Source: Haliotis rubra
Taxonomy: Eukaryota
Reading direction: 5' to 3'
DNA length: 64,000 nt
Assembly (NCBI RefSeq): GCF_003918875.1
Contig: NW_025767697.1
Span: 186,001 to 250,000, forward strand
Part shown: positions 8,071-62,964 of the stretch, piece after piece
Numbering within the stretch: the stretch's first letter is position 1
How the letters are laid out: each line of letters opens with the position of its first letter
The notes under the pieces: model-generated
Databases searched by the model: none
What the model was told of the DNA's origin: nothing
The model's input: only the letters and a program-made list of their open reading frames with translations
Made by a program: the position numbers and the translations under genes

Positions 8071-8279
8071 CTAAATGAAATTGTGGTAGAGACCATTGGA
8101 CACCATGACTCTATCCTCGTCATCGTGAACGTTGCTGGAAGAAATGTCCTATTCTTCCTGCAGAGAATCCTTCCCTGTCATACGCTTTATCATAGAGTCC
8201 ATTGTCAACCATTCCCTCGCTAGTTTCCAGTCCTCCATCATACAAATCACCAACACAATTGTCGCTGCCAACGGGGTCG
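8071..8279 (-). pseudogene. Decayed ancestral C-terminus of gene A tail
   Basis: After the stop at 8280 the repeat continues in shifted frames (GLETSEGMVDNGLYD), passes a TAG, and ends VMVSNGLYHNFI*. This is homologous to MMSNDLYHSFV* of the 50936 exon. Confidence 0.7.
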
Positions 8280-9410
8280 TCAAGGAGGACCCCTTTCGTA
8301 GACATCGTTTTCTACCATATCACAATCATTTTTCCCAGCCAGTTTACTTTTGTTAACAGAAGTGTCGGATTCGTCCTGCAGAGATTCCTTCTCTCTGTCA
8401 TACTCGAATTTATCATAGAGTCCATTGTCAACCATTCCCACGTTTGTTTCCAGTCCTACACCATACAAATCACCAACAGGATTGTCGTTGTCAGCCATGC
8501 TGCCAAAGGGTTCATCAAGATGAAGAGGCCCTCCGTCGTAGACGTCTTTTTCTATCATTTCATAACCATCTTTCCAAGACTGTTTACTGTTGTTAGGAGA
8601 AGTGTTGGATTCTACCTGCACAGTTTCTTTCTCTCTGTTAAAGTCGAATTCATCATAGAGCCCATTGTCAACCATTCCCTCGCTAGTTTCCAGTCCTTCA
8701 TCATACGAATCACCAACAGCATTGTCGTTGTCAGCCATGCTGCCAAAGGGTTCATCAAGATGAGGAGGCCCTCCGTCATAGACATCATTTTCTATCATTT
8801 CACGCTTATCTTCCCAAGACTGTTTACTGTTGTTAGCAGAAGCGTCGGATTCGACCTGCACAGATTCTTTCTCTCTGTCAAAGTCGAATTTATCATAGAG
8901 CCCATTGTCAACCATTCCCTCGCTAGTTTCCAGTCCTTCATCACACGAATCACCAACAGGGTTGTCGTTGTCAGCCATGCTGCCAAAGGGTTCATCAAGA
9001 TGAGGAGGCCCTCCGTCATAGACATCATTTTCTATCATTTCACGCTTATCTTCCCAAGACTGTTTACTGTTGTTAGCAGAAGCGTCGGATTCGACCTGCA
9101 CAGATTCTTTCTCTCTGTCAGAGTCGAATTTATCATAGAGCCCATTGTCAACCATTCCCTCGCTAGTTTCCAGTCCATCACCAACATGATTGCCTTTTGC
9201 AGCACAAGGAGGCCCTCTGTCGTAGAGGTCGTTTTCTTTCATTTCACGATTATTTTTCCAAGCCTGTTCACTATTATTATGAGAAGTGTCAGAATCGTCC
9301 TGAACAGATTCTTTCTCTCTTTCAAAGTCGAATTTATCATAGGCTACATTGTCAACCATTGCCTCTCGAAGATTATCAAAACCTCCGTCATATAAATCAT
9401 TTTCAGTCAT
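8180..9410 (-). repeat. Coding tandem repeat, 240-nt (80-aa) period, about 5 units
   Basis: tcgaatt(t/c)atcatagag(c/t)ccattgtcaaccattccc recurs in the lines starting 8401, 8641, 8881 and 9121. The central units are nearly identical. Confidence 0.95.
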
Positions 9411-9747
9411 ACCACATATTCCTTGATGACCGTTGTCAGCCCTGCTGCCATTAACCATAAATGTACTGTTGTCGTACATATCTACTGTAGAACCCAAAGG
9501 CAACGCCTTAGCGTACTGATCCTGCTCATTTTTTCCAGAAGTCTCAGTTCGGTGTCCAAGTTCTGAATTTAAGGATTGTCCAACTCTTGCTCCAAATTCT
9601 GGATCGAGCACAAAATTCTGGTGAAAGGTTTCATTTTGTTCCAAGCCATTGTGATGCTTTTCCGTATTCATGGGACTGAGTTCTAAAGGCCTTTCAAAAT
9701 GACCTTTACCGGGAGTTTCAAGAGGATGGCTCTTCTTCACATGTTTC
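8280..9747 (-). CDS. Gene A last exon: acidic cytoplasmic tail with 11 M-x-x-(N/K)-x-x-Y motifs
   Basis: Phase-2 acceptor ttcAAG|G AAA CAT and a 486-aa open frame. Motifs: MTENDLY, MVDNVAY, MKENDLY, MVDNGLY x4, MIENDVY x2, MIEKDVY, MVENDVYE. Confidence 0.85.
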
Positions 9748-12700
9748 CTTGAATAAAATAAAACAATTAACTGACATTAACTTGTGATACAGCCGACCCT
9801 TATTATCCCGAATTCGGTTATCACTGCTGTATAGATATTTGGACCCGATTCTCTAGTCAAGACCAGCTCATTATATAAACACTTTTTTTATTTCCTATGT
9901 TGCGATTAAATCGTGTTTGTTTATAATTATGAACAGATTACATTATCTCACTTATTGGTCATGACGCGTTATCTCGAGTGTCCGGATACCTGAAATTCCA
10001 ACATGATTCCGATTGGTCGAGATAACGGGATTTGACAGTATTAAAGTCTAAGATGAATATATTTTCAGAAAATTTAAAAAGTGTATAGTTGAAGATAGTT
10101 TATGCAATACAATTGTCAATATTTATTGAAAACATAAATTCTAATAAACACTCATCATGTTACAATATAAAAAAGAAAAATCTGAATATTACCTGCAAAG
10201 GACAACTGAAATCACGACAATCAAGATTGTGACAACACAGCCAGAGACAGCGGAAGCAACCCATATTATCAGTCCTGTTAAAATAAGATCATCATGATAG
10301 ATTGTCAGTGAGTTGAAGAGTAAGATTCGATGACTGGAAAGGTCTGAACAACTTGTATTACTTCATGAACAGTAATGACCTCTTACATTACTGTTCATGA
10401 CATGTTTGTTTTCTGTTAAGTGAAGATTAAGTTAAATTAGACAAAAGATATGTCGGTGCAATGCTGAGGTACCTACCCGGTTCAGGGCTGGACGTGGTTG
10501 TGAAAGATGCTTCGCCATTCTTTGTAGTCATATTTGTAGAGAATACTGATGAGAAATAAAACTGACAATTAGATACATCGCACAATGTAATTTGGTTTTA
10601 AAGTAGTAAATAAATAGATTTCGTGTGTTTATTTTCTCATTCATTTGGGACATTTAGGTGAACATATGTTTGCATATGTTTCTGACGGGTGCCACCGGTG
10701 AGAGGGTGTACGTTCAGCTTCTTGTATCATACGTTTTAACTGTTTGATGGTGATTCTTAATCAGTCAATATCGACTCATACACGCGGTACTTACTAGATT
10801 TCTCTTTCATATTCGACAGCATGAATGACATAGATTAATCCAGGGTAGTGATTTGTATATCTATATATATGTGTGTATCCCTTATATCAATGATTTGACT
10901 GTTTGTATCGGTTGTAAGTCCTATCGGTGTAAGTAATGTCTTACATCAAATGATGTGTCTTGGTTCCTCCTTTCGCAAAATAAATAGAAGTCTTAACGCT
11001 ATTCTGTCTCTAACACATATCCCATCCCACCCCTTCCAGAATATCAATTGGTCTGTCCCTAAAATGTGCATTACACAGCACACTACTTGAGTGGTTAAGA
11101 TTGTTGATTTTACGAGGAAATATTGCATGCACGGTCCATTGACTGTGATCTCTAAATGAATTGTTCCTGATCATTCCTCATGCGGTTTTATCTTGTTGAT
11201 ATTTTGTGTATCTTTTCACCTGTATAAGACTTTGGAGTGGTCACTGCCGTGGTTGACTTTGGAGTAGTCAGCGCCGTGGTTGTGTTTGTTGTTGGATCAC
11301 GTGTCACTGTTTCTGACATTGTTGATTGATCTGTTGGGAGAAAGAGGCTGCTGAATTGTGTCTTGTCAGGATTTGAAGCATTACTTTTCCTTTGAGACGA
11401 AATGTACTGTTGAATGACAATTCCTTGGAATATGTTTCGGACAGGTTTACAATAAACATATAAACATATAAACATATATGTTGACATATACTGACAAGTT
11501 TTTAGATAGAAGACATAAACATGAACGCTTACTTTTATGAGATTCTATTTTTTCGAAACTTGCGTTTATATGCGATTTGGGAAAACAAAAATGACTTTAC
11601 ATTTCAGGTTTTAAATGCTCTTCTTCTTTGTATAATTCACCAGGATGCACATAATTATTAGAATATGACCTTCACAACTGGTCAGTAAATCATTTTCATA
11701 CCGTTGTATCACTGTACCAAAATTTGAACTTGCTACCCCATGTATTTATAATTGTTTGTTATGGTAGGAATATATTGTAAATGCTACTAAGTCTTCGTTT
11801 CATAGCAACCGTTGGTTATACCATCTCTTTGAGTAGTTATCTGCATTCGTTCCTACTAGTTTTTCAGTCCTATGTTTGTTTTTTCGTTCGTTTTTATAAG
11901 AAATTGTGCGCAATGAATACCTGCACATGACTCTCGTCTGGTCGCAAGTAGTGTGAACCAACAAAGAACACAGAAATGTTTTACAATTAATAATTGTAGT
12001 ATAACAGTATCTAGGTTTACAAATCAACACAAACCACTGCAATGTAATTGCAATGCCAGAAGAGAATGTATAAACAAGGGCAGTATAGAATCTAATAGCA
12101 GTGGTAATGGCAGCAGAGTCAGTGGTTACAATATTCACCTCGCAGCAACAGTGAACAAGTCTGCAAAATATGCCTTTGCAGGATACAAAGGTGACACTAT
12201 CACACTTTATGTAGTTTGTGATCAGAGAGGTTTATGTTTTCCCACTTACATGGTCTCAAAACCTTACATGTGGCCGTCATTTAGCTTTTGGCCTGTCTTG
12301 TGAGTATTTCTGTCAGAAAACGACTGAATGTATTGCAACCAAACCTTATTTGATAGGGACATGGAGGAGAAAATGTTTGTTACAACAGTTCTGCTGTTCT
12401 GGTGGTATGTACTAAAGTATGTACTACTCATGTAGTTCTCAAGGAATATAGACATAGGATCGACTTTAAATTACTGATATACCACATAGCGACTGTGTGT
12501 ATTTACATGCGATATAAGAATATAGTGTGCACACACCGTGAAGAAATGCGTGTAAATACGTATGGTTACATGTGTCTGTTGATACCATCATCGTTTGATT
12601 TGGAAGGCCACTGTGTTGCTTTACTCACAGTCGAGTTAGTAGTATGTCCATGCGTAGATGTAGCGGTCGTAAAAGACGCTGCAACTTGAGATTTTTTATG

Positions 12701-15700
12701 TAGTTCCAAGGAAGATAGATATGTATATGCTTGCTTTGTTTGTTTTTATTTATGTATCATCTTTAATTTTCGCGGACCTTTTTCAAATGTATTAAAGAAC
12801 TGCAAGAAAAGATGTAGACATATAAGTAAACCTAATTCAAAAGCCTTAATAATGTTGTTGCTATGCAGTGAAAACATACCGAAATAGCGTTCGATCACAA
12901 TTGTTTAATGTATCGTGCACATCAATAATGTTCATACTCATACAAGAGAAACTCACTGCTAATACACGTATGGCGGTAAATATCTCATGTGAGCGGCTGA
13001 AAACGTTTAACGTATAATTAAGGTCATACAACGTCAGTATACACTCACCAATAGATGTAGACTGTTTAAATGCCGCTGTTTCAGTTGTTGGTGTGTCCGA
13101 AGTACTTGGAATGGTTGTACTCTGTGACGGCTGCTGTGTTGACGTAGTCGTGGTTGATGTATTCAATTTTTCTCCGCTGATAGTTATGTTCATTTGACCT
13201 GAATCTATGAACAAGTTATTTCTGCAGGATTCTCGAGGTCCAAGTTATATGTTTATCTTTAAGACAATTCTAGCGTGATATAGGGCTATACGTCATGTCA
13301 TTTACGTACTGAAGAATCGGTTACAATAACAATTACAGTGATTACAGTAAACTAGTTAGAAAGGCATCAGTTCGTATTTCTGGTTAATGTATTAGTTAGA
13401 TAAACAGTTATCACAGTAATGACAGTTATCATATGGGATACTCCAAAAGATAGTTTGATTAATACACACCGGCAACGCGTATCCATAGATTTGATCCATC
13501 CTGATCATGGTTATCGTAGACTATAACTATTTCGGCAGCTGTTCCAGGTAATACCCTGTTGTGCTGGTTCACGTTCACGTTTGTCCCGAGTTGTCTCCCG
13601 TCACCGGAGATGTTAAGCATCCCTGACTTCATCCGCTGTTCCACCAACGTTACTTGTAAAGTCTGCCCTGTGATCCTAACAACACAGCTGCTGGTCACAC
13701 CGACACTGTCAGGGAAGCCGGGAGAATGGAGGTACACCGACCCGCTTACTGTTGTTGTGACTGGACTACACATGTTCATACTACCTGAAACACAATGACA
13801 CAGGACAAGTAAGATAAGGTTTATGTTGGGATTTGAGACATATGTCATGAGTCACATTGAGCGAATTGCTCACACATGCTAGATTTTGCTTTGGCTTCAT
13901 GTTGATCAAGGTTGATATGACTGACTGACTGAGTTTGGTTTTACGTCGCTTTTAGCAATATTCCAGCTACATCACGGCGGGGGGAACACCAGAATACATG
14001 TACCCATGTGGGGATTCGAACCCGGATCTTCGGCGTGACGAGCCAACGCTTTAACAACTAGGCTACCCCACCGCCCCAGGTTGATATGAAGTTAACTAGC
14101 AGCTCCAAGAACCAACGCTCATTAATTACTGTCAATGTTACTGATTTGTATTGTTACCAGGATAAGGATGTTCTGTCCTACTGGCAACACTAAGGTCAAA
14201 ATCTAGATTACAGTAGGCATGAAATTCAACGATAGTCGAAGTAAAAACATTTTTTTTTTTTAAAATTAGCATACGAATTAGTAGTTGGCAGCATCCTGCG
14301 TTTGGTGTTTACAATATATATTGCTGATGGTTTGTCAAGTTTGTTGCACTCAGCAATACTCAATATTCCAGCTATATTGCGGCAGTCTTAAAATAATCTG
14401 AACCAGACAAGACAGTGATAAACAGCATGAACAGCGATCTACGCAATTGGGATACGATGACATATGTCAGTCAGATCAGCAAGCCTGACCACTCGATCCC
14501 ATTAGTCGGTTCCTTCGACAACGTAACACGTGATATAATTGGGATTACACGTTCACAGTAAAGTACAGATTCTAGTACTTGTGTTTGGTTGAGTCGCATT
14601 CCAGATTCGAACACACGCTCTCAGAGTCAAGCACTTAATCGGTTGTAGTTTAGAGCACGGAATTTGTGTACCCCTCTCACAAGTGTAAATTGGCACGGCT
14701 CCATCGGCCGACAGCTGGGAATACACAATGCCATTTAGAAAGAGGTCAAATGGTACACATGAATCTATACTTTATTGACAAAGTGCAATCCCAATATAAC
14801 ATGTCTTACTTTTGATGACTTTGTAAATGGTATTGTCTATTCGTTATTACGACAAGCATTGGTTGCTTATAGAGCAGTGTTTTTCGGTGTTGAAACACGT
14901 CTACCGGAGGAATAGCTAGATGTATCTTTGGAAAGTTCAGGATCTCTTGTCATTTTGGGTTGTTTCCATGGTAACCATACAATTTTAGAAAGACCGCTTT
15001 TGCTATATATAAATGGCGAAGTCATCACAATTTTAACTATATTTAGTCAATGCTCTGAGTGTTTCTGATACAACAAGCATTGCGTCTCCAATACATGTAA
15101 CACGTCAAGGGCACAGGTCAAGGTCACAACAGTCGAATTGTGGCTGTTTTTGTTCAGAAGTCAATATAATTGTAATGTTGCATTTTTCGTAACTGATGCG
15201 TGCATTATACGTCCAGGACCATGCATTTCGTATCGTAAGAAACGATAGAATGAACTTTCTGAAAAAGGTAAAATAATTATAGAAAGCATGGCCTGTAATG
15301 CGTCTCCATGGTTACTATAATTTATGTATTTTTTGTTGCATTTACCTTCACCGAATCTGCATCCACAAGAAGTAGGAGGTGGAAAATCTAGTTGCCTAAC
15401 ACGGCTGTGACACCATACAAAAGTCGATATTCATAACTGGTCAATAATATTCAAGCCTGATAGCGTCCTGTAATTATCAGTATATTGTGAGCTGAGCTTA
15501 CAATAACATGGGTGCTGAGAATGAGGTTAGATGACATGCACGTCGAGATCAAATGTGTGAGAATGACAAACACCTAACGTGACAATGAAAACCTTGATAG
15601 AAAACGCAGTATACCATGGTCCGCAATATGGTAAAGAGCTAGTGATCATAAGTTACGGAAACAGTAACACAATGCATAAAAGACTACTGGGTTTAAATAT

Positions 15701-17981
15701 TGACTCATACGTGTAGGTAAAATGAATCATACACTGACATTATCCATATCATTCCTTGTTCATGTTGTCAGTTTGATATACATGTAGTACTAAGTGTAGG
15801 ATATAACATGACCCGCGGGCAGTATTGAAAAGTAAGCCCATTTCCCAAGGGAAGAGGGCTTACTTTTCAATAATGCCCACTTGCATGTTATATCCAACTT
15901 ATAAACCGACCGAAGATATACTTTAGATATAATTTCAATATTTGGTATTTACTGTTGAAATCAACTGGGATGAGACTGGCAGCCGACGCCTCGCAATGCA
16001 CGTGCTAGCCGTGCCCTGCACGTGCGCTGCCCGCACTACCCGTCTTGGGAGGAACACACGGTTCATACCGACAAACAATCTCATTCTTTACAGCGATCCT
16101 TCGTAGCCTTGTGGATAAAACCGCCAAGCTAGTAAGCGAAGGGTTACGTGTTCGAAACCGGGTGTCAGCACTACATGTCGGAAATTGTCAATGACGCCAT
16201 ATTTTAAGATCGAATTCAGTGATGGCAAGACAAAGCCGTATCAATCTTCAAAACAAGTATTAATTCAAAGTCAAGGGCTATTCCTCAGAAAATCACGGGG
16301 CAGAGGAACGTTATTAAGATAATTGCCCGAAGAAGCGAGATTGTATCAGATTTTAGGGATATTACGAGAAAAAGTATCCCCTAAGAACAATAGAGTAACG
16401 TCACTGTCGGTTTATAAGTATGGGTTTAATCACGAGGACCTGGTGTCTAATCGCTGAAATGGTTAGCGCGACCTAGAGTCCGTCGGTCGTGCGAGATCCA
16501 CGTTATACATGTTCCTTGAGTCTTTCACACGAGCACCTTTTTTGCTTTGGCTTCTCGACTTATGAAATGCATGTGCATATGTGCATGTTCCAAGACAACG
16601 AAATAATCCACCTGGGACCAGCTCGAGCATATATATGCTTCACCGAGACAAGTACTAGCATCGCCTTCATTGACAGGGTTTGTTTCTATATTTTCGTGTA
16701 GCACATGCGCATAATCCAGACAATAACATGACACGTACCAAATCAACCAAATATTTCACAGTTCTTAAATGGGGAAATTATTAGTAAATAAATATTTCTG
16801 GTTACTTTCATAAAGATTTGTTACTGTCTTACTAACAGTCAACGACCAAAGTTGCCTTTGATACAGAAGTTCTTTACTTCAGCACTGAGCAGCACCGGTA
16901 ATACTGCAGTTGCTATCCGACTGTGCATCCAGCGTCTGCAAATTCGTTTATGACGTTCATGGTAAATATTTACAATAATATGTCTATAATGGACTCAGTG
17001 GCTGATATTAAAGAAATCAGTGTTTATACGTAGATCTACTACAGGTGTCTCCAATGATCACCTTTGATACAGATATACCATATTGAAGTCTCACCTTTGA
17101 TACAGTTGTACTTTACTTCAGCAGCAGCATCGGTAATATTACAGTTGTTGATGGTCGGTACCTGCATGGCTTCATAACATGACTGTTTCCCATTACAGTT
17201 TACGACCAGGCCATACTGGCTGCTGTCGAGTTTCTTACTACACGACTCAGCAGATTTCACACGACATGTCGTATCTCCATCCCCATACACCTCGTGCACG
17301 ACATGTATCCATTCCCCGGCAGGACACTGAAGCTGTACTGTAAAGACTTTCGTCAAATCCTCTATACATGTGTTTTCAGTCTTGTCACCTTTGAATATAT
17401 TGAAACTCGTTCAGTCAAACATACTTGACAAAATATACTTGAATATATTGTTCCAATTGACGGTAAAACCCTATTTGTTTTGAAATAAACGAGACGTTTC
17501 GAAGCAAAGATGCAGCGTCATCTTTAAAACATGAAATTCTGTGTGACTTCAATTCACAAAACTAGTGCGTATATATGCTGATAGGTAAACATTGCTTAAA
17601 CGCTGCAGAAATGTGTAATGTTGTCTTAAATGTGATCAATTATCAGTGTGTATTTGTACACAGTCTGAGTCTAAGTCTGATTTGGACTTTGTTGTAAGAG
17701 GTGTCTCAAAGGTATGTATCATACCACAGTTAATGTTTAAAATGGCTTGTGAGCTTTAAAATCCAGTGGCATGTAAGGCTTTTGACACTTGCGCGTCAGT
17801 CACAACAAATCACACGTACATAATGCGATATAAAATCATACGGCAACCGGAATTATGAGGAAATAATCACATTACACATACTGAAATACAGAATACAAAG
17901 ACACGTTTGTCTGTACCATTACTCACCATATACAGCCAAGAAGAAATGTAGACAGATCACAAACACCCTTTCAACATGCAT
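8280..17981 (-). CDS. Gene A (multi-exon): type I membrane receptor, SP-SUEL lectin-CUB-like-mucin-TM-long acidic NxxY-repeat tail, about 849 aa
   Basis: Exons 17927-17981, 17095-17388, 13470-13784, 13049-13204, 11220-11330, 10477-10545, 10193-10274 and 8280-9747 all have GT-AG boundaries and compatible phases (1,1,1,1,1,1,2). They sum to 2550 nt, a multiple of 3, provided exon 12570-12678 is skipped. Confidence 0.8.
9788..10040. mobile_element. Possible Tc1/pogo-type MITE
   Basis: TA-flanked, with imperfect inverted ends (tacagccgacccttattatcc...gataacgggatttgacagta). Confidence 0.35.
10193..10274 (-). CDS. Gene A transmembrane exon
   Basis: CAG|GA...TGC AG|GTAAT. Encodes GLIIWVASAVSGCVVTILIVVISVVLCR; 82 nt, phase 1 to 2. 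Confidence 0.85.
10477..10545 (-). CDS. Gene A Ser/Thr stalk exon
   Basis: CAG|TA...CCG G|GTAGGT. Encodes FSTNMTTKNGEASFTTTSSPEP; 69 nt. Confidence 0.7.
11220..11330 (-). CDS. Gene A mucin-like exon
   Basis: CAG|AT...ACA G|GTGAA. Encodes DQSTMSETVTRDPTTNTTTALTTPKSTTAVTTPKSYT; 111 nt. Confidence 0.75.
12570..12678 (-). pseudogene. Gene A mucin exon 2, frameshifted (109 nt), probably skipped
   Basis: Homologous to the intact 120-123-nt exons in C, D and E. It has a 1-nt insertion (tcgtttgatt), an internal deletion and a weakened donor (T|GTAACC). Confidence 0.65.
13049..13204 (-). CDS. Gene A CUB-end/mucin exon 1 (alternative acceptor at 13198)
   Basis: Encodes DSGQMNITISGEKLNTSTTTTSTQQPSQSTT...TSIG; donor G|GTGAGT. 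Confidence 0.8.
13470..13784 (-). CDS. Gene A CUB-like exon
   Basis: 315 nt, phase 1-1. MCSPVTTTVSGSVYLHSPGFPDSVGVTSSCVVRI matches the CUB N-terminal C...G.l.SPgFP...C.w.I pattern. Confidence 0.8.
13921..14077 (-). mobile_element. tRNA-derived SINE
   Basis: A/B-box head (ggtagcctagttgttaaagcg...gggttcgaatccc), (cagt)n tail and 12-bp TSD aggttgatatga. Related copies at about 32320-32478 and 38875-38980. Confidence 0.8.
15796..16414. mobile_element. Non-autonomous element with terminal palindrome (Crypton-like)
   Basis: Absent from the homologous intron of gene D (about 45855). About 100-bp hairpin at 15797-15898 (ggatataacatg...catgttatatcc), and ttataaaccgac/gtcggtttataa inverted pair. Confidence 0.55.
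17095..17388 (-). CDS. Gene A SUEL/Gal_lectin (rhamnose-binding-lectin-like) exon, intact
   Basis: 294 nt, phase 1-1. Eight Cys in SUEL spacing: C..LQC..G..I....VYG....C....C...CNGKQSC...C...V.YNC. Confidence 0.85.
17927..17981 (-). CDS. Gene A first coding exon (signal peptide)
   Basis: gccATG start; encodes MHVERVFVICLHFFLAVY; donor G|GTGAGT. Confidence 0.75.
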
Positions 17982-33705: not shown

Positions 33706-33707
33706 TA

Positions 33708-50935: not shown

Positions 50936-51728
50936 TTACACGAAACTGTGGTAGAGGTCATTAGACATCATGTCAACCTCCTCCTTAGCTGACCCTGCTG
51001 TATTGATATCTTGGGTAGCTGAAACAGACACTTCCTCAAATTCACCATTTTGATCTGCTACTGTAGTGTCATATCCAGAACTCTCATATATATCATTGTC
51101 CACCATCCCTTCAATAGTACTGACGCTGACATCTTCTTCTCCATGAAACAAGTCATCCTCTGGCGCGCTTTCTTCATCCTGGTTGCCGTCATCGGTACTG
51201 ACATCATGGTTCTTTGTAGTAGGAGGTCCCCCACAGTACACATCGTTTTCGATCATGTGACACGTGGATTTTGTAGTGTTTCCACGATCAAACAGAAACA
51301 TGTCCACCGATTCAACTTGATCAGTGTCAGCTTTCAGGTCACCTGTTTCAGGTGATTCAGTGTCCTCGACATGTTTATCTTCATTTGAACCAGTCAGGCT
51401 ATCTGGTGACGGAGTACATCTCGGATGCTTGATCGTAAATGTGTTGTTTTCATTCATGTTTATTCTAGAGCTACGTGGCAATACTACAGAGTATCTGTCC
51501 TGTACTCGGAGGGCCCTGGTTTCTTCTTTGCCTCTTGAGTCTGTATTTAATGACATATCCCCATTTCCAGACATTAATGCTGGATCTATGATGAAATAAT
51601 GTTGGCTGCCATCATGCTTTCGTAAACCATTAGGTGTCCTATTGTGGGGAGAGTGGAGCTCCAGAGGTCTGTCAATGCCACCGTTGTGAGGAGAAGCTGC
51701 AGAACGGTTAGCTTTATCATTTTTACAC
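50936..51728 (-). CDS. Gene F last exon: acidic NxxY tail ending in -SFV
   Basis: Phase-2 acceptor tgCAG|G and an open frame of about 263 aa. Contains MIENDVY, MVDNDIYES and MMSNDLYHSFV*. Its N-terminal part (RPLEL, FIIDP) is homologous to the gene A tail. Confidence 0.7.

Positions 51729-54868: not shown

Positions 54869-54921
<53 letters not shown>
54850..54921. repeat. (TA)n microsatellite
   Basis: Seen directly in the sequence. Confidence 0.95.
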
Positions 54922-54925
<4 letters not shown>

Positions 54926-56541: not shown

Positions 56542-58074
56542 ACTGAGTCAAAAAAGAAACTTCACATTCTTTCTTCAGGGCACTATAAAAGAACAAGAAA
56601 TGGTAAGATGGTTAAATTGTTATTATTTCAATGCTGAGATCTGTGTGATGTACTCGATACACTGACAGTGCCATAATCAGTTCCATTAGGCTACACCGCC
56701 GTTCCAAAACATGGGTATACAGAATGTCAAGTCACAAGAATAAAAATTCGAAATTTCTCAGTTCAATATCGTGTATGGCCGCCCCGCGCATTCATTCACC
56801 ACTGCCAAACACCGTCTCCTCATCGACTGCCTGATGCTTGTGAACACGTGGTTGGGGATTCTGCGCCATTGCTTTTGCAAGGCAGCGCCAAGTTCCTGCA
56901 AATTCTGAGGTTGGTTCCTAAGACCACGAAGCCTTCTCCCAAGTGCATCCCAAACGTGCTCTCTATTGATTAAGGTCAGGGGACCTCGATGGCCAGTCCA
57001 TGACGTTGATTCCAGCGTTTTGAAGGAAATTTCGTGTCAACATCGCGGTATGCGGCCGAGCATTATCATGCTGGAACTGTAGACCTGGGCCATGAGCCGC
57101 CATGAAAGGAACGAGTTCAGGGGTGAGCACCTGGTCGCGGTAAGCAGCAGCTGTGAGGTTTCCACGGATGACCAGAAGTCGGGAACGGTTGTTCCCACAG
57201 AAAGCACCCCACACCATGCAACTTCCGCCCCGAATCTGTCGACTTCCTGTACACAACATTGGGCATACCGTTCACGACGTCGTCTCCAGACTCTATGCCT
57301 GCCGTCCGCGAATCTGAGGGTAAACCTGATTCATCGCTAAAGACGACTCGATTCCAGTCTCTCTGGGTCCATCGGAGGTGACGTTGGGCCCACAGCAGAC
57401 GTTGACGTTGATGAAACGGCGTCAATATTGGCCCACGATATGGACGTCGAGAATGGAGATTGGCAGCCCGCAACCGATTTCGAATGGTCTGTGAGGACAG
57501 TCGACCTCTAAACATCTCAGCCCTGGTTCGTGTAGCCGGCAGAAATCTGTCACGTAGGTGACGTAGGACGATTTGACGGTCTTCTGCTCGTGACGTCACA
57601 CGTGGACGACCCGACCTTGGGCGATCAGAAGTGGTGCCAGTTTGTTGTAGACGACCTCGCAAGTCATACACAGTACGACGGCTGCATCCCATTGCTCTTG
57701 CGACGTCAATAACTGATCTTCCCGCTTGCAACATGCCAACGGCACGTTCACGCTGCACATTTGACAATCGTGGCATTTCAAGTACCGTTAGAACTGTGGT
57801 TTAAAAGTGCTTTTTCAATTCTTGAGGCCAATGCAAACACGTGCATATGAAGAAAACTTCGATGCGAAGATCACGTGATCGACTGCACGTGCAAAACCTG
57901 ATTTGGCACTAACGTCATTTGCACGACGAATGGATGGGTTTGAGTGGGTTTTGCTAACGTTTTTCTAGAGTCGAAAGATAGGGATCCCATTTCGGATACA
58001 TAGATGTATCATCAGAGAAAAATTATTCATTATTTTTCAAATTACATTTTGTGAAGTTTCTTTTTTGACTCAGT
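56542..58074 (-). mobile_element. Tc1/mariner DNA transposon (DD34E), full length, frameshifted transposase
   Basis: 25-bp TIRs actgagtcaaaaaagaaacttcaca, TA-flanked. Transposase 57776 to about 56763: MPRLS..RERAVGML, RSGRPRVT, VFSDES, FQHDNARPH, WPSRSPDLN(P)IE, GHTRY*. Confidence 0.95.
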
Positions 58075-59133
58075 TATGCAGTTCTGGTTGTATGTACTAA
58101 AGCTCTGTTCTCAAGGAACGTAAACATTGTATCGACTTTAAATTACTGATATACTACATAGCGACTGTGTATTTACATGCGATAGAAGAATATGGTGTGC
58201 ACACACCGTGAAGAAATGCGTATAGTTACGTATGGTTACCTGTGTCTGTTATTAAAACGGTTGTTGATACCATCGTCGTTGATTTGGAAGGCCACCGTGT
58301 TGCTTTACTCATTGTCGAGTTAGTAGTATGTCCATGCGTAGATGTAGTGGTCGTAAAAGACGCTGCAACTAAGGATACTAGAGAAGTTATGCTAGCTTTG
58401 TTTGTTTTCTTTCATGTATTATCTTTTCGATGACATTTTTCAAATGTATTAAATAACAGGTACATCCGTGCAAGGAAAGATGTAGATACATAATTAAACC
58501 TAATTCAAAAGCATTGTTGTTGCTATGCAATGAAAAGATACCGAAACAGCATTCGACCACAATCGTTTAAAGTATCATGCACATCAATAATGTTCACACT
58601 CATACAGAAGAAACACACTACTAATACACGTATGGAGGTAAATATCCCATGTAAGCTTCTGAAAACGTTTGACGTATAATTAAGGTCATACAAAGTCAGC
58701 ATACATTCACCAATTGCAGTAGACTGTGTACTTGCCGCTGTTTCAGTTGTTGTGTCCAAAGTACTTGGACCGGATGTACTCTGTGAACGTGACGGCTGCT
58801 GTATTGACGTGGGTGTGGTTGATGCATCCAGTATTTCACCGGTGACCGTTATGTTCATTCGGCCTGAATCTATGAACAAGGTTTGGTTACAGCAGTTCTA
58901 GGTCCGAGTTATGTGTTTATCTTTAAGACAATTCTAGCGTGATACAGAGTTATATGTCATGTGAACAATGTACTGAAGAATCGGTTTCAATAACAATTAC
59001 AGTGAACACAGTAAATTAATTGTAGTTAGGAAGGTATCAGCTCGCATTTCTTGTTAGTTTATTAGTTAGCTAAATACATCGACTAATACTTATCATATGG
59101 GACACGCCAAAAGATTGTTTGATTAATACACAC

Positions 59134-59448
59134 CAGCAACTTTGATCCACAGGTTTGATCCATCATGATCATGGTTATCGTAGACTATAACTATTTCGGC
59201 ATCTGTTCTGTGTAATACCCTGTTGTACAGGACCATGTTCCCGTTTGTCCAGAGTTGTCTCCCGTCACAAGAGATGTTAAGCAACCCTGACTTCATCCGC
59301 TGTTCAACCAATGTTACTTGTAAAGTCTGCCCTGTGATCCTAACAACACAGCTGCTGTTCACACCGACACTGTCAGGGAAGCCGGGAGAATGGAGGTACA
59401 CCGACCCGGTTACTATTGTTGTGACTGGACTACACATGTTCATACTAC
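59134..59448 (-). CDS. Gene E CUB-like exon (open)
   Basis: 315 nt, highly similar to the A, C and D exons. Confidence 0.7.
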
Positions 59449-62400
59449 CTGAAACATATGACAAGTAGAACAAACGTTATGATTACTGTTTACTGTTGTT
59501 TCTTCCGATAACAAAGCTATGTATCGTTAAATGTGTATTTTTGTACGGCGGAAGTCACTCGGCTTAAACATTTCTTCGTATCGTAACTGATAAATGCTAC
59601 CTTAAGCTATTGATGAAACGTTGTGACTTCATATCACAAAAGGAAACATCGACCCAACGCCAGTGAATATCCAGTTTCTCTAAAGTCACGTAACATTCCT
59701 CGTGAATGTGTCAGTTAGCATTCTCTCGATTTTTTTTGGTCAAAATCAATACCTGAGGCAAACGGAAAGCATTCAAGCGACTGATGCTCAGGTACATATG
59801 TCACTAGTTGCCATTAAAAAACAGACTGAGTGCTTAACACTTGTGGCAATAAAAGAACATTGGCATATGAACAGAGGATGACGTAAAGAAATTGTAGACA
59901 CTGACAAAATACCAACAAACTTGTATACTATTTATTATTGTGTCAATCGAAATTTATAATCAGAGCTATTTGGTTTATCAGATGAACATGATGTTAAATG
60001 TAAGATTATATGTATGGCATAAATATCGTTTAATCTTATAAAACACTCGTGAAGATCTGGATTAGAATGGGGTCTTTAGCAACCCATGCTTGTCGTACGA
60101 AAAGTACTATGTGTCTCTATCAATCTTATGGGAACTAATGATTTGACTGAATGAAACATCGATCGAATTGTGCGAACTGATGTCGAGAAATAGGGATGAG
60201 TATGTGGATACTTGTTTTGCCTCCAGCCTGAAGTGTTAACGCACATACGTAATATATTTCGGAGACAGGATGATGATGTAATCTGAGGCGCCACACTTGT
60301 CAGAATTCGAATACCAAAATGACTTAAACTGATTTGCAGGTAGCAAAAGTAATATAAGTCCCCATAGTTCCTAGTATGGTGATCTACCTTCCGTTGTTGG
60401 CGATCTATAGCCCGTTTTTATATTGTATTGTCTTCGTAAATAAAATAGTTTTACATGTTCATGCTATTTTTTAGACTCCATCTATGATATTTTAGTTATT
60501 TTACAGTCCTTCGATGACTGATTATTTAGCAACTTTAATTTATTGTTTATGTAAAACATTTCTCATCACGATATGGCTGAAATATTGCCGATGTGACGTT
60601 AAATTCTAACTCACTCACTCACTTAAACTGATTTAATATTTTTGTTACAACCTTCATTAATACACATTGACAGGTCGACAGGTAACACCAGGTCCAGTGA
60701 TAGTTCCATGTTTCAGAATCTTGTTAGATTGTAAGTGTACCATTCCTTTGTTGTCCCAAAATGCTTAGCTTTCAGTTTAGTGGTGGCTTTCACATCATAT
60801 CCATAAGTGGCGACTTACGGGATCGGGTGGTCAGCCTCGCTGACTTGGTTGACACATGTCACAGTAGATTGATGCTCATTCTGTTTATCAGTGGGCTGTC
60901 TTGTCCAGACTCCATTATTTAGAGACCGCAACCACATAGCTGGGATATTTGTAGTTTTACAAACAAACAAAACTATTAAACCTTAATGTGAGTGGAATTA
61001 ATATGTAAAGAATAATTATTGAGTAACATAATATATCAAAACAATTCATTCTGGGGGGATAAGGATGACGGCTGGTACAATGTTGAAGCGTAGAGCATGT
61101 CAAAGCGTCAGTCTGTGACTGGTTGATGTGAAACTGTGAATCCGAGAAAGTCAATTAGTTAAAGATCTTGTATTTATTGAATAAAATAGACATATAATTA
61201 ACGACCAGACGTAAACCAAGTCTTCTTAGTCAGATCAGTACTCCTTACTTACAGACATATTTCACGGTCTGTACTGAAAGGGATGAGAGTAGAGTGAAAA
61301 TATATTTCAGCTGCGGACAGAATCAAACGAGCCTTGGTCAATATTTCTGTAAGAGATTAATTAATTTTAATAAATTGTACATTTGAAGAAATATGGTATC
61401 TATTAAGTTTGACAATAAGGTTGTCATGAAAAATCTACCTTTATGTCGATGTAAACAAAACCGGCGAGATGGTATTTCCTTTTCCCTGCTGACCTTTAAA
61501 TGGGGTACCTATTTGTACATACAGTCCAGTTGCTGCATCAAAGGGGAACGTGAAATGTGTCGCAACGTGTATTAACCCTTGACGTCACTGTATTGTAGCA
61601 GTAATACGTCGTCAGTAAAATAACGCTGCACTTGAGATATCTTAGGAAATACGTAGATCTACACACGTTAACTGATTGACAATTAACGCACTGACATAAA
61701 GACATTAATATTATGGTTTTCTTTTTTTGTTTGTATGGTTAAAATATTTTTAAAGTTTCGAATGAAATGTATGCTATAATTTATACAATGTCATATATAC
61801 TGTATATTATGTAATGTCATGAATGTTTTGGGTTTGTTTGCTGTTTCACGTCGTATTCAGGAGTATTTTGTCTTTATAACAGCGGTCTGTAAGATTTGGA
61901 CCAATTCGGGGATTGATATCATGAACCTCGATCTACGCAAATTGGATAAAATAACCCATAACAGCTGGTATGGGCTGGCGAAGACTAATTCCAACGCGGA
62001 TCTACTATACCTTTGTACTTTTATCTAACACAGTGAATGATTTCATGCTTCCATAATTAAGTTTTGTATGACCGTTGCACATATCTCCCAAGTTTTTTCT
62101 ATTCTAAGACTACACTGAGAATGGTTTAACATTCTTTGTACAGATCAGCAGACATCCTCAACTCAATTTTTATGATACACTTATAATGCATTTCAGTAGC
62201 AATATCACTAAATTTTGTAATTTTTGAGACTGATACATTCGTGGGTGTAATTCATCGAGTTTGTGGGAACGAGTGGTTGACAGCACGAGCAACAAGCCGT
62301 AGAGGGGCTAAACACATGTGTCATTGAATGTATTGTGATATGCTGACAAGGACAAGGGCAGCATAGGTTATGTACATTGTGTACGTCTCGGTCGAATGTC

Positions 62401-62964
62401 GAAAGATGTGGTGCATCAGGCATGCAGGCATATGAAATTCACGTCTCACCTTTAATACAGTTGTACTTTACTTCAGCAGCAGCAGCAGCGGTAATTTTGC
62501 AGTTGTTGATGGGCTGTACCTGCATGTCTTCACGACATGACGGCTTCCCATTACAGTTCACAACCAGGCCAGACTGGCTGCTAGCGAGGAGCTTACTACA
62601 AGCGTGGGCAGATTTCAGACGACATGTCGCTGCATCTCCATCCCCGTACACCTCTTGCACGACATGTATCCGATCATCGACAGAGCACTGAAGCTGTACT
62701 GTAAAGACTTTCGTCAAATCTTCTATACATCTGTTTCCAGACACCTTTGAATATAATGTAATATCGTTCAGTCAAACACACTTGATACCATACACTCAAA
62801 GATATTACTCCAATCGGAGGTAAAATACTGTTTGTTTGTTTGTTTTTGCTCCCTAAAACATCTTTGAGACATACATACATGTAATTCTTTGTGATATGAA
62901 ACATTATTAAATCAATCAATTACAGCTGAAAACTAAATTTCCCAATAATATTTACATTTTACAT

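What the first reader, a model, noticed from the sequence alone, without database searches (positions are those of the whole stretch)
8071..62744. Tandem cluster of SUEL-lectin + CUB + mucin-stalk receptors with tyrosine-motif tails: a candidate uncharacterised molluscan immune/recognition receptor family
Seen: four copies of a phase-1 exon cassette (SP, about 294-nt 8-Cys exon, 315-nt CUB-like exon, Thr-rich exons, 82-nt TM exon, phase-2 tail exon) plus further remnants, none visible as a whole in the ORF track. Established: SUEL domains occur in rhamnose-binding lectins, latrophilins and EVA-1; CUB domains mediate extracellular protein binding; Tyr motifs recruit SH2/PTB adaptors. I do not recognise a named family with this single-pass SUEL-CUB-mucin-Tyr-tail architecture. 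Inference: a rapidly evolving birth-and-death receptor locus, reminiscent of Siglec/KIR/Alr-type loci.
Basis: partly seen in the sequence, partly recalled or inferred. Interest (0 to 1): 0.85.

Follow-up and report, generated by a model that had tools for sequence, protein, structure and literature searches.

The report
Abalone SUEL-CUB mucin receptor gene array
This stretch of the blacklip abalone genome holds four tandem copies (one intact, three damaged) of an unstudied, abalone-only family of cell-surface proteins with a lectin-like and a CUB domain on a sugar-coated stalk and tyrosine-signalling tails, already present but unnamed in public protein sets.

Summary
On the minus strand lie four tandem units (A-D) of SP, SUEL (293-298 nt), CUB (315 nt), Thr-rich, TM (82 nt) and tail exons, plus remnants.

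- **Domains:** the 8-Cys exon is a SUEL/rhamnose-binding-lectin domain (profile against solved structures, E 4e-13). The second exon has no Pfam hit, but its model has a CUB fold (Z about 10; the top 22 hits are all CUB).
- **Origin:** the window is Haliotis rubra contig C2807:186001-250000. It is part of an array of at least 14 units spanning about 220 kb.
- **Range:** all named relatives are Haliotis proteins, found in four species.
- **State of the units:** only A is intact. It equals RefSeq LOC124265002 isoform X7, and an RNA-like contig shows its SP-to-SUEL splice. B has several lesions. C has a 7-nt deletion. D lacks a TM segment.
- **Tails:** there are interchangeable classes. One has NxxY arrays; another has an ITAM-like YxxI-x12-YxxI followed by two YxN motifs.
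- **Selection:** dN/dS between paralogs is about 0.7, so positive selection is not shown.
- **Function:** an immune role is not tested.
- **Open lead:** six of the eight RefSeq isoforms join exons of D, C or B to A's stalk, TM and tail exons. This is unverified.

The scan found this family before on another piece of this genome (s1-344798).

The parts
17927..17981 (-). Unit A signal-peptide exon (18 codons + 1 nt, GTGAGT donor)
   Evidence: The ATG-started hydrophobic peptide is 100% identical to the H. rubra paralogs' N-termini. It maps exactly to P0052 residues 1-19. RNA-like contig X2 record 13 joins it to the SUEL exon.
17095..17388 (-). Unit A SUEL/RBL-type lectin-like exon, 294 nt, 8 Cys, phase 1-1
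   Evidence: Pfam PF02140 E 1.3e-5, below the gathering score. The family profile hits solved rhamnose-binding lectin 5h4s at E 4e-13. Boundaries.
13470..13784 (-). Unit A CUB-fold exon, 315 nt, 2 Cys, phase 1-1
   Evidence: AG/GT boundaries. The model of the paralog ectodomain matches CUB domains at Z 10.3, rmsd 2.5 A over 101 residues.
13049..13204 (-). Unit A Thr-rich stalk exon 1
   Evidence: Canonical splice sites. Exact match to P0052 residues 222-273. Covered by RNA-like runs.
12602..12681 (-). Unit A stalk exon 2, frame-broken relative to paralog P0004 and skipped in isoform X7
   Evidence: Three-frame reading. Not used in P0052.
11220..11330 (-). Unit A Thr-rich stalk exon 3
10477..10545 (-). 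Unit A stalk exon 4
10193..10274 (-). Unit A transmembrane exon, 82 nt (phase 1 to phase 2)
   Evidence: Hydrophobic scan. Exact match to P0052.
8280..9747 (-). Unit A long acidic tail exon: 488 aa, 17 Tyr, about four 240-nt tandem repeats carrying NxxY motifs
   Evidence: ORF, repeat family D2, motif list, exact match to P0052.
36752..37049 (-). Unit B SUEL exon, defective: acceptor AG lost (CTG), 2-nt deletion near the donor, last Cys lost
   Evidence: Alignment A3. The same truncated match (positions 1-93) occurs at a duplicate locus, C2807:286515.
31122..31436 (-). Unit B CUB exon, intact
   Evidence: Used in RefSeq isoforms X2 and X5.
30677..30841 (-). Unit B Thr-rich exon 1, intact
28868..28949 (-). 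Unit B TM exon, intact
28467..28760 (-). Unit B short tail exon, defective: frameshift, in-frame stop, terminal Tyr changed to Cys
   Evidence: Three-frame reading. 1 TGA reported.
48641..48710 (-). Unit C signal-peptide exon
   Evidence: tblastn with the H. asinina N-terminus. GTGAGT donor.
48026..48318 (-). Unit C SUEL exon with a 7-nt deletion (frameshift, second Cys lost)
   Evidence: Alignment A3, columns 83-89. Split HSPs against P0034.
43370..43684 (-). Unit C CUB exon, intact
42999..43154 (-). Unit C Thr-rich exon 1
41379..41460 (-). Unit C TM exon, 82 nt
40381..40588 (-). Unit C short tail exon, intact: YYGI-x12-YVHI, YANS, terminal YVNT
   Evidence: One difference in 65 residues from P0034's tail.
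38139..38837 (-). Remnant of a long ('L2') tail exon downstream of unit C, with at least 2 frameshifts
   Evidence: Three HSPs in different frames against P0001. 81% DNA identity to 50258-51632.
62450..62744 (-). Unit D SUEL exon, intact (phase 0 start). Its SP exon lies outside the window at C2807:250566-250634
59134..59448 (-). Unit D CUB exon, intact
58711..58869 (-). Unit D Thr-rich exon 1
56963..57776 (-). Tc1/mariner-type transposase remnant inserted inside unit D (two ORFs, frame-shifted)
   Evidence: Pfam HTH_Tnp_Tc3_2 at 3.5e-10 and DDE_3 at 5e-7.
54182..54502 (-). Second, 'type 2' CUB exon of unit D. The frame is open but both Cys are lost. No SUEL2 exon lies upstream
53218..53394 (.). 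Assembly gap (N) inside intron-like sequence of unit D
52995..53096 (-). Unit D stalk exon (type 2)
52693..52754 (-). Unit D stalk exon that should continue into the TM segment but runs into a stop. No TM-coding stretch between 51745 and 52693
50936..51728 (-). Unit D long ('L2') tail exon, open, with NDVY / NDIY / NDLY motifs
   Evidence: ORF. 74% identity to P0001's tail. Acceptor.
606..674 (-). Signal-peptide exon of the next ('type 2') unit, which continues beyond the window's left edge
   Evidence: 78% identity to the N-terminus of P0007. SUEL and CUB exons at C2807:184808 and 183323.

Best explanation
The window is a 55-kb section of a tandem array in the blacklip abalone, Haliotis rubra. 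The array holds at least 14 units over about 220 kb on contig C2807.

Shown:
- The array encodes a multigene family, found only in Haliotis proteins, of type I membrane glycoproteins. The order of parts is: signal peptide, one SUEL/rhamnose-binding-lectin-type domain with 8 Cys, one divergent CUB-fold domain, an O-glycosylation-type Ser/Thr/Pro stalk, one TM helix, and a cytoplasmic tail from one of several interchangeable classes.
- Tail classes seen in the window: a long acidic tail with arrays of NxxY motifs (units A and D), and a short tail with YxxI-x12-YxxI followed by two YxN motifs (units B and C).
- Every ectodomain exon except D's SUEL exon (phase 0 to 1) is symmetric phase 1-1, which lets domains and tails be duplicated and recombined in frame.
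- In this assembly unit A is intact, and the exons sampled by RNA-like contigs are spliced or covered as modelled. Unit B is a pseudogene with several independent lesions. Unit C carries one frameshift. Unit D is a fusion of two units that lost a SUEL exon and its TM segment and gained a Tc1/mariner insertion. This is birth-and-death evolution.

Inferred:
- The SUEL-CUB head, held away from the membrane by the mucin stalk, binds an extracellular ligand. This is more likely a protein or an unusual glycan than rhamnose, because the DPC/KYL sugar-site motif is absent.
- Clustering then leads to tyrosine phosphorylation of the tail and recruitment of SH2 or PTB adaptors (Syk-type and Grb2-type for short tails, Shc/PTB-type for NxxY tails).
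- The biological role, non-self or microbe recognition against cell-cell recognition, is not decided by any data here.
For: **Exon cassette and splice sites:**

**SUEL domain:** the family profile against solved structures gives rhamnose-binding lectin 5h4s at E 4e-13 and latrophilin lectin domains at 2e-6 to 1e-3. Pfam PF02140 reaches 34.4 bits (cut-off 31.4) in paralog P0001. The 8 Cys are invariant or nearly invariant.

**CUB domain:** the AlphaFold model has pLDDT about 80 over residues 100-206. Foldseek hits are spermadhesin, C1r CUB2, neuropilin, cubilin and others. VIA-align's top 22 hits are all CUB, with Z 7.8-10.3 and rmsd 2.4-2.9 A over about 100 residues, then a drop to 6.6. Cubilin is the only non-lectin sequence hit, at E 0.035.

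**Family range:** the profile search of 1.84 billion representatives gave 18 hits. Eleven of the 13 family members among them were checked and are Haliotis proteins; one is unnamed and one (P0008) was not looked up. The rest, where scanned, are bacterial Ig-like repeats.

**Identity of the window:** P0052 (XP_046555748, LOC124265002 isoform X7) maps exactly to unit A.

**Expression:**
- An RNA-like contig joins 17385|17924, which is the SP-to-SUEL splice.
- Depth in three RNA-like runs peaks over the bins holding the exons and is about zero in several wholly intronic bins.
- The run that behaves like DNA covers every bin.

**Array size:** 30 CUB-exon matches and 25 SUEL-exon matches in the genome. 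Fifteen and 14 of them lie on C2807.

**Lesions:**

**Tail motifs and their conservation in four species:**

**Precedent:** ITAM-Syk signalling is shown for a mollusc receptor, oyster CgIgR (PMC6994640).
Against: - No Pfam CUB hit on the five window CUB-like exons at E up to 1, nor on the family proteins scanned at E 0.1 or 0.01. The CUB call rests on a predicted structure of a paralog with moderate confidence (mean pLDDT 67.6).
- The SUEL half of the model is poor (pLDDT 32-77), so its fold was not tested structurally.
- The window's own SUEL exons score below Pfam's gathering cut-off (21-26 bits against 31.4).
- The RBL signature motifs are only partly kept: YGR is YGD, and the DPC...KYL motif is absent (motifs from PMC3269628).
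- No evidence for ligand, phosphorylation, tissue or immune induction.
- dN/dS of about 0.7 fits relaxed constraint as well as diversifying selection.
- The RNA-like runs are only guessed to be RNA. Some of their contigs differ by up to 9% from unit A, so they may come from paralogs.
- Frame breaks could in part be assembly errors in a paralog-rich region.
Confidence: 0.7

Rival explanations
1. The array works as one complex transcription unit. Ectodomain exons (SUEL, CUB, first stalk exon) of the upstream, partly decayed units D, C and B are spliced in frame onto the stalk, TM and tail exons of the downstream intact unit A. This would give combinatorial receptor isoforms, as in variable-exon and constant-exon loci such as clustered protocadherins or UGT1A.
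For: - Six of the eight RefSeq isoforms of LOC124265002 have this structure. In X3, D's SUEL and CUB exons are joined to A's stalk, TM and tail exons. X2, X4, X5, X6 and X8 use C's or B's CUB exon, and four of them use B's Thr1 exon.
- All ectodomain exons are phase 1-1, so any combination stays in frame.
- All 15 CUB exons on the contig are open and full-length, including those in units whose other exons are broken. In contrast, 4 of 9 short-tail exons carry stops (Fisher p = 0.012).
- A sister locus has 20 isoforms.
Against: - Most units in the array carry their own tail exons, so a constant region is not needed.
- Isoforms X2 and X4 jump from the middle of D's SUEL exon to the middle of C's. 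Residues 82-84 are not encoded colinearly in the window. This looks like split mapping of reads from an unassembled paralog or allele.
- Exon ends are nearly identical between units, so junction reads are easily misplaced.
- The one junction I could see directly is intra-unit: A's SP exon to A's SUEL exon.
- Gene conversion could also keep the CUB exons open.
Confidence: 0.2
2. Units B, C and D are not really defective. Their frame breaks and missing pieces are assembly or polishing errors in a paralog-dense region of a long-read assembly, and the window holds four working genes.
For: - Unit C has a single lesion, and its closest copy on contig C1026 (L019, P0034) is intact at that spot.
- An earlier follow-up on another piece of this genome also found most copies frame-broken. 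That could point to a systematic assembly problem.
- An N gap sits inside unit D.
Against: - B has five independent lesions of different kinds: lost splice acceptor, 2-nt deletion, frameshift, nonsense codon, and Tyr changed to Cys. Its truncated SUEL form recurs at a duplicated locus.
- D's state involves a transposon insertion, loss of both Cys in CUB2 (one of these losses is shared with the copy on C1026) and kilobase-scale rearrangement. These are not polishing errors.
- A 7-nt deletion is not a typical homopolymer error.
Confidence: 0.12
3. The proteins are structural or adhesive surface mucins, as the automatic names 'mucin-22-like' and 'cell wall protein DAN4-like' suggest. Their tails do not signal, and the Tyr motifs are chance features of acidic low-complexity sequence.
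For: - The stalk is 55% Ser+Thr+Pro.
- The long tails are repetitive and acidic (24% Asp+Glu).
- No kinase or adaptor evidence exists.
Against: - All four Tyr of the short tail and their contexts (Y-x-G-I, Y-G-H-I, Y-A/V-N-S, Y-V/I-N) are kept in H. rubra, H. asinina, H. cracherodii and H. rufescens, while the ectodomains have diverged to 48-72% identity.
- In the long tails Tyr sits in two alternating, well-kept motifs rather than at random.
- A third tail class repeats S-Y-A-N-S six or more times.
Confidence: 0.1

Closest known systems
SUEL / rhamnose-binding lectins (RBL; Pfam PF02140), e.g. sea urchin SUEL, salmon CSL1-3, solved lectin 5h4s
   Same: About 95-residue domain with eight half-cystines in the RBL spacing. 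The profile match to a solved RBL is E 4e-13. The domain is encoded by a single exon, as in Hydractinia rhamnospondin (PMC3269628).
   Different: RBLs are mostly secreted, often tandem-domain lectins. Here there is one domain on a membrane protein. The YGR motif reads YGD, and the DPC-x-GT-x-KYL sugar-site motif is replaced (N-N-C-N-I-T-D-A-A-A), so rhamnose or galactose binding is doubtful.
Latrophilins (ADGRL1-3) and C. elegans EVA-1: membrane proteins with N-terminal SUEL-type domains
   Same: A SUEL-type domain at the membrane-distal end of a surface receptor. Profile hits to latrophilin lectin domains are at E 2e-6 to 1e-3. In latrophilins this domain serves protein binding rather than sugar binding (my knowledge, not tested here).
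   Different: No olfactomedin, hormone-binding, GAIN or 7TM parts. This family is single-pass with a CUB domain and Tyr-motif tail, and there is no orthology: the relatives are restricted to Haliotis.
Single-pass CUB receptors with tyrosine-phosphorylated tails: CDCP1, DCBLD1/2 (ESDN), neuropilins, Kremen, Neto
   Same: CUB fold next to the membrane-distal end of a type I protein. The structural matches include neuropilin, Kremen and Neto2 CUB domains at Z 8.4-10.2. CDCP1 and DCBLD2 also carry several Tyr docking motifs (my knowledge).
   Different: No sequence-level CUB signal (no Pfam hit). Only the first CUB disulfide is present. The domain partners differ (SUEL and a mucin stalk), and so do the tail motifs.
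Lineage-specific, tandemly arrayed invertebrate and vertebrate recognition receptor families (KIR/Siglec/LILR, Hydractinia Alr, snail FREPs, oyster CgIgR)
   Same: Large tandem arrays, many pseudogenes, and near-identical ectodomains coupled to different signalling tails. The short tail carries an ITAM-type motif, and ITAM-Syk signalling is documented for oyster CgIgR (PMC6994640).
   Different: The ectodomain is not of the Ig, fibrinogen or C-type lectin type. No ITIM or ITSM was seen. No evidence of expression in haemocytes, of polymorphism or of positive selection.

Membership tests
SUEL / rhamnose-binding lectin domain (PF02140) | Eight half-cystines in conserved spacing (C1-C3, C2-C8, C4-C7, C5-C6 pattern) | tested here: met
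   Eight Cys in units A and D, invariant or at least 90% conserved in 28 family sequences. The pattern is described in PMC3269628. The disulfide pairing itself was not tested.
SUEL / rhamnose-binding lectin domain (PF02140) | Significant profile match to bona fide RBL domains | tested here: met
   The family profile against PDB sequences gives 5h4s at E 4e-13, CSL2 at 1.5e-5 and latrophilin lectin domains at 2e-6 to 1e-3, full-length over the domain.
SUEL / rhamnose-binding lectin domain (PF02140) | Score above Pfam's gathering cut-off (31.4 bits) | tested here: inconclusive
   The window exons score 21.3-25.9 bits and unit A's whole protein 22.7. Paralog P0001 scores 34.4 and P0002 30.8. Precomputed PF02140 is listed for several paralogs.
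SUEL / rhamnose-binding lectin domain (PF02140) | YGR and DPC-x-GT-x-KYL motifs that form the sugar site | tested here: not met
   YGR reads Y-G-D. The DPC...KYL stretch aligns to t-n-C-n-i-t-d-a-a-a-e-v. Motif definition from PMC3269628.
SUEL / rhamnose-binding lectin domain (PF02140) | Binding of L-rhamnose or D-galactosides | not testable with these tools
   Needs recombinant ectodomain and glycan binding assays.
CUB domain (PF00431) | Match to the Pfam CUB profile | tested here: not met
   No CUB hit on any of the five window CUB-like exons at E up to 1, nor on the family proteins scanned at E 0.1 or 0.01. The only sequence hint is cubilin at E 0.035 over 34 residues.
CUB domain (PF00431) | About 110-residue beta-sandwich (jelly-roll) superposable on solved CUB domains | tested here: met
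   Model residues 104-206 against C1s CUB2 give Z 10.3 and rmsd 2.5 A over 101 residues. The top 22 of 48,161 chains are all CUB, and the next fold scores Z 6.6. Foldseek target-normalised TM-score is 0.63-0.64 to C1r CUB2, spermadhesin and MASP-1 CUB2. The model is of paralog P0004 (77% identical in this exon), with pLDDT about 80 in this half.
CUB domain (PF00431) | Two conserved disulfides (C1-C2, C3-C4) | tested here: not met
   Only two Cys per domain, at exon positions 5 and 33, consistent with the first disulfide. There is no second pair. Some solved CUB domains also lack one disulfide (my knowledge).
CUB domain (PF00431) | Ca2+-binding Glu/Asp/Asp ligand site of ligand-binding CUBs | not tested
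   No residue-level structural alignment was made.
ITAM-bearing immunoreceptors | Cytoplasmic YxxL/I-x(6-12)-YxxL/I | tested here: met
   Unit C tail has Y-Y-G-I, 12 residues, Y-V-H-I. The motif is conserved as Y-D/N-G-I-x12-Y-G-H-I in four species. Consensus as quoted in PMC6994640. The spacing is at the upper limit, and the usual acidic residue at -3 of the first Tyr is absent.
ITAM-bearing immunoreceptors | Tyr phosphorylation and recruitment of a tandem-SH2 kinase (Syk/Shark) | not testable with these tools
   Biochemical assay needed.
Birth-and-death recognition receptor loci | Tandem array with intact genes, pseudogenes and fragments | tested here: met
   At least 14 units on C2807, with further clusters on four other contigs. 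In the window there are 1 intact and 3 defective units plus remnants.
Birth-and-death recognition receptor loci | Diversifying selection on the ligand-binding domains | tested here: inconclusive
   Pairwise Nei-Gojobori omega has median 0.66 (CUB, 17 exons) and 0.71 (SUEL, 14 exons). Fifteen to 21% of pairs exceed 1. No site model was run, and pseudogene exons may be included.
Birth-and-death recognition receptor loci | Expression in immune cells or induction by pathogens | not testable with these tools
   Run identities and tissues are coded. Only presence in RNA-like runs is shown.

The most novel reading that the evidence does not exclude
The array is a combinatorial 'variable head / shared tail' locus. 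Read-through transcripts splice phase-1 SUEL and CUB exons from upstream units, including units that can no longer make a protein on their own, onto the stalk-TM-tail exons of a downstream intact unit. One abalone locus would then produce many receptor isoforms by alternative splicing. This would be a lectin/CUB-based analogue of protocadherin- or Dscam-type diversification.
Probability: 0.2. Interest if true: 0.8.

Novelty: new variant of a known kind. Interest (0 to 1): 0.5.

Why it matters
Abalone are farmed and threatened animals that suffer from viral and bacterial disease, and their recognition receptors are poorly known.

This family combines known building blocks (SUEL lectin domain, CUB, mucin stalk, ITAM-type and NxxY tails) in an architecture that has no name and, as far as the searches here reach, no paper. 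It is expanded to about 25-30 exon sets in one genome and was found only in Haliotis proteins.

It gives concrete, testable candidates for surface receptors that signal through phosphotyrosine in a mollusc. The closely similar heads (about 85% identical) coupled to different tails recall paired receptors.

It also shows that the current RefSeq models for this locus merge several tandem units into one 'gene'. Anyone using these annotations for expression or association studies needs to know this. If the merged isoforms are real, the locus would be a new example of splicing-based receptor diversification.

Tried and rejected
- **Pfam on the five CUB-like exons:** no CUB hit, only sub-threshold noise.
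- **AlphaFold on the five-exon alignment alone:** pLDDT 49.9, unusable. It was replaced by a 28-sequence ectodomain alignment of family proteins.
- **Non-Haliotis hits of the profile search:** P0012, P0015, P0016 and P0018 are bacterial Ig-like, cadherin-like or T9SS proteins with short repeated matches. They were rejected as compositional. P0017 was not scanned.
- **Signal-peptide exon for unit B:** none found.
- **TM-coding stretch in unit D (51745-52754):** none found.
- **SUEL2 exon in unit D:** none found.
- **Literature:** searches for the architecture, for abalone rhamnose-binding lectins and for six LOC identifiers gave no paper on this family.
- **dN/dS:** no excess of non-synonymous change.
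- **ITIM/ITSM patterns:** none seen when reading the tails by eye.
- **Protein-language-model look-alikes of the CUB exon:** these pointed to CUB clusters, but at scores of 0.85-0.88, which are leads only.
- Exons were searched by reference. Whole proteins were represented by RefSeq proteins that the tools returned, and P0052 is identical to unit A's exons.
- **Limits reached:** The lesions of B, C and D and the inter-unit junctions could therefore not be checked against reads.

Full report
**1. What is in the window**

All relevant coding sequence lies on the minus strand. ORF listing, repeat finding and tblastn between the window's own ORFs show four tandem units, called A to D here from low to high coordinates.

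Each unit has an 8-Cys exon, a 315-nt exon, Thr-rich exons, a TM exon and a tail exon. Reading the boundaries directly gives these results:
- The 315-nt exon is flanked by AG and GT and is phase 1 at both ends in all four units. The copies are 85-90% identical in protein.
- The 8-Cys exon is 294 nt in A (17095-17388) and 295 nt in D (62450-62744).
- The TM exons are 82 nt and the tail exons start in phase 2.

**2. The assembly gap**

The N run at 53218-53394 was checked before anything was built on unit D. On the minus strand both flanks have stops in all three frames within about 100 nt. The nearest exons are the second CUB exon (54182-54502) and a stalk exon (52995-53096).

The gap therefore sits in intron-like sequence. 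Nothing in this report reads across it. One stalk exon expected from relatives was not found on either side. It may be hidden in the gap or deleted.

**3. Where the window comes from and what is already annotated**

A profile of the five CUB-like exons was searched against 1.84 billion representative proteins. It gave only 18 hits, of which 11 were strong. Names from two further searches and two cluster look-ups show that all named relatives are 'uncharacterized' or spuriously named proteins of Haliotis rubra, H. asinina, H. cracherodii and H. rufescens. The remaining weak hits that were scanned are bacterial Ig-like repeat proteins.

The window is G000:C2807:186001-250000 on a 370,432-bp contig.

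RefSeq protein XP_046555748 (LOC124265002 isoform X7; P0052, 849 aa) maps letter for letter to unit A. It uses these exons:

| Exon | Coordinates mapped |
|---|---|
| SP | 17981-17925 |
| SUEL | 17386-17093 |
| CUB | 13782-13471 |
| Stalk | 13205-13050, 11331-11221, 10546-10475 |
| TM | 10272-10192 |
| Tail | 9746-8283 |

These are the ranges of the letter-for-letter peptide match, which runs a few letters past some splice sites; the exon boundaries are those given under parts.

Hence the genome is the H. rubra RefSeq assembly. The family is known to annotation pipelines but unnamed. No paper on it was found.

**4. Domains**

*SUEL domain.*
- The window exons hit Pfam PF02140 over the whole model but below the gathering score. 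Paralog P0001 passes it.
- A 28-sequence ectodomain profile hits solved rhamnose-binding lectin 5h4s at E 4e-13. It hits the latrophilin lectin domains at 2e-6 to 1e-3.
- The eight Cys are conserved.
- Of the two RBL signature motifs described in PMC3269628, YGR reads YGD and the DPC...KYL motif is absent. I therefore call it a SUEL-type domain whose sugar specificity is doubtful.

*CUB domain.*
- There is no Pfam hit.
- The second model is of H. rubra paralog P0004 residues 20-225 with 28 aligned sequences. It has pLDDT about 80 over the second domain.
- Foldseek returns almost only CUB domains.
- An exhaustive VIA-align search of 48,161 chains puts 22 CUB domains on top. Their Z is 7.8-10.3 and rmsd 2.4-2.9 A over about 100 of 103 residues. 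The next fold scores Z 6.6.
- The only non-lectin sequence hit in the PDB was cubilin, at E 0.035.
- The domain keeps one Cys pair only.
- Verdict: CUB fold, with sequence beyond Pfam's reach.

*Stalk and TM.* In unit A the stalk is 113 residues with 55% Ser+Thr+Pro and four N-glycosylation sequons. It is followed by a 27-residue hydrophobic segment.

**5. Tails**

Three tail classes occur in the family.
- **Long tails** (units A and D). These are acidic and carry two alternating motifs, M-x-E-N-D-V/L-Y-D-G-G-P-P and G-M-V-D-N-G-L-Y-D-K-F-D. Both are NxxY motifs with a hydrophobic residue at -5, the general form bound by PTB domains. Unit A has 17 Tyr, and about four 240-nt tandem repeats multiply the motifs.
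- **Short tails** (units B and C). The order is Y-x-G-I, twelve residues, Y-G/V-H-I, then Y-A-N-S and a C-terminal Y-V-N-T. This is an ITAM-type core at the upper spacing limit plus two YxN motifs, the form preferred by Grb2-type SH2 domains. All four Tyr and their contexts are conserved in the four species, although the ectodomains have diverged to 48-72% identity.
- **A third class**, in H. rufescens and H. cracherodii, repeats S-Y-A-N-S.

Ectodomain types and tail classes are found in different combinations. This fits exon shuffling through the symmetric phase-1 exons. ITAM-Syk signalling has been shown for an oyster receptor (PMC6994640). For the abalone proteins it is inference only.

**6. 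State of the four units**

*Unit A* is intact, apart from one optional stalk exon (12602-12681). That exon is frame-broken relative to a paralog and is skipped in isoform X7.

*Unit B* is a pseudogene with several independent lesions:
- Its SUEL exon has CTG in place of the acceptor AG.
- The same exon has a 2-nt deletion that removes the last Cys and shifts the donor phase.
- Its tail has a frameshift, an in-frame stop, and Cys in place of the terminal Tyr.
- The same truncated SUEL form recurs at C2807:286515, so the lesion predates a segmental duplication and is not an assembly slip.
- B's CUB, first stalk and TM exons remain intact.

*Unit C* has its own SP exon (48641-48710). It also has intact CUB, stalk, TM and tail exons. 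Its SUEL exon carries a 7-nt deletion that shifts the frame. Its closest copy, on contig C1026, is intact there. Downstream of C lies a frameshifted long-tail fragment (38139-38837).

*Unit D* is a composite:
- It has an intact SP exon just outside the window (C2807:250566-250634), and intact SUEL, CUB and stalk exons.
- A Tc1/mariner remnant follows at 56963-57776.
- Next comes sequence homologous to A's stalk introns.
- A 'type 2' CUB exon follows that has lost both Cys and has no SUEL exon before it.
- One stalk exon runs into a stop where relatives continue into the TM segment.
- An open long tail exon ends the unit.

**7. Expression**

Three small runs behave like RNA. Their depth is 8-49 in the bins holding A's exons and about zero in several wholly intronic bins, with low depth in others. 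The run that behaves like DNA covers every bin.

One 588-nt contig (X2, record 13) joins 17385 directly to 17924. Given the shared GTG on both sides, this is the predicted GT..AG splice between A's SP and SUEL exons.

Contigs over the CUB exon and over the 5' exon differ from the window by about 1%. Contigs over part of the SUEL exon differ by 5-9%, so some come from paralogs or divergent alleles. The runs' nature as RNA is a guess by the tool, and tissues are not known.

**8. The array and its evolution**

The genome holds 30 matches to the CUB exon and 25 to the SUEL exon on five contigs. Fifteen and 14 of these lie on C2807 between 145 kb and 367 kb. Most are followed by their own short or long tail exon.

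Contig C1026 (90 kb) mirrors the D-C part of the window, down to a shared Cys-to-Phe change in the second CUB. It may be an uncollapsed haplotype, so the counts are upper estimates of loci.

Pairwise dN/dS between open paralogous exons has a median of 0.66 (CUB) and 0.71 (SUEL), at dS of about 0.13-0.15. This means young duplicates under weak constraint. Positive selection is neither shown nor excluded.

**9. An unexpected point: the RefSeq isoforms**

Besides X7, the other mapped isoforms of LOC124265002 join exons of different units:
- In X3, D's SP, SUEL and CUB exons are spliced to A's stalk, TM and tail exons.
- X2, X4, X5, X6 and X8 use C's or B's CUB exon, and four of them use B's first stalk exon, followed again by A's exons.

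All ectodomain exons are phase 1-1, so such products stay in frame. All 15 CUB exons on the contig are open, while 4 of 9 short-tail exons carry stops (p = 0.012).

This could mean real inter-unit splicing that reuses heads of decayed units. It could equally come from misplaced junction reads between near-identical exon ends. Isoforms X2 and X4 even switch from D to C in the middle of the SUEL exon, with three residues that the window does not encode colinearly. That looks artefactual. I rate the combinatorial reading at about 0.2. Long-read cDNA would settle it.

**10. Verdict**

- It is too broad on taxon (Haliotis only, not molluscs in general).
- It is unproven on rapid adaptive evolution and on an immune role.
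- The family is already present, unnamed, in public protein sets. This scan met it before on another piece of the same genome (s1-344798), where a follow-up also found most copies frame-broken.
- I class it as a new variant of a known kind: a lineage-specific receptor family built from known modules. Interest is moderate, and the possible splicing-based diversification is the part most worth following.

Noticed in passing
window 606-674 (-), continuing to C2807:183323-185092: Signal-peptide exon of a further 'type 2' family unit. Its SUEL and CUB exons lie just left of the window, so the array continues beyond both window edges.
   Followed up: partly
window 56963-57776 (-): Tc1/mariner-type transposase remnant (HTH_Tnp_Tc3_2 plus DDE_3, split over two frames) inserted inside unit D.
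   Followed up: yes
window 24807-25208 (+), within 21124-25807: Plus-strand ORF with several Tyr motifs (for example S-T-I-Y-E-E-L) between units A and B. An earlier first-stage note (s1-340002) reads it as a mucin-stalk-only membrane adaptor. It has no Pfam hit and shows no similarity to the SUEL-CUB family. Not examined further.
   Followed up: no
window 13809-14743: The intron of unit A holds an extremely abundant repeat. Summed contig depth reaches about 7 million in the DNA-like run and tens of thousands in the RNA-like runs, with many rearranged joints.
   Followed up: no
window 62571 / 48134 (RefSeq isoforms X2 and X4): Two RefSeq isoforms switch from unit D's SUEL exon to unit C's in mid-exon. 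Three residues (V-L-I) are not encoded colinearly in the window. This is probably a model built from reads of an unassembled paralog or allele.
   Followed up: partly
G000 contig C1026 (90,245 bp) against window 38000-63000: C1026 carries the same order of units as D-C and shares the Cys-to-Phe change in the second CUB exon. It also has an intact version of C's SUEL exon. It may be an uncollapsed haplotype or a very recent duplicate.
   Followed up: partly
window 4168-4591 and 33281-33709; 34910-35793 and 44036-44543: Dispersed repeats, 86-90% identical, in intergenic or intronic sequence. They have no Pfam hit and are probably transposon fragments.
   Followed up: no
window 17115-17385 against 13662-13782 and 17924-18100: RNA-like contigs differ from the assembly by 5-9% over the SUEL exon but only about 1% over the CUB exon and the 5' exon. 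The cause could be paralog cross-mapping or unusually high allelic diversity of the SUEL domain.
   Followed up: no
window 54634-54948 (-): A microsatellite-like stretch (translating as I-Y-I-Y repeats) lies at the junction between the two halves of composite unit D, near the presumed deletion breakpoint.
   Followed up: no
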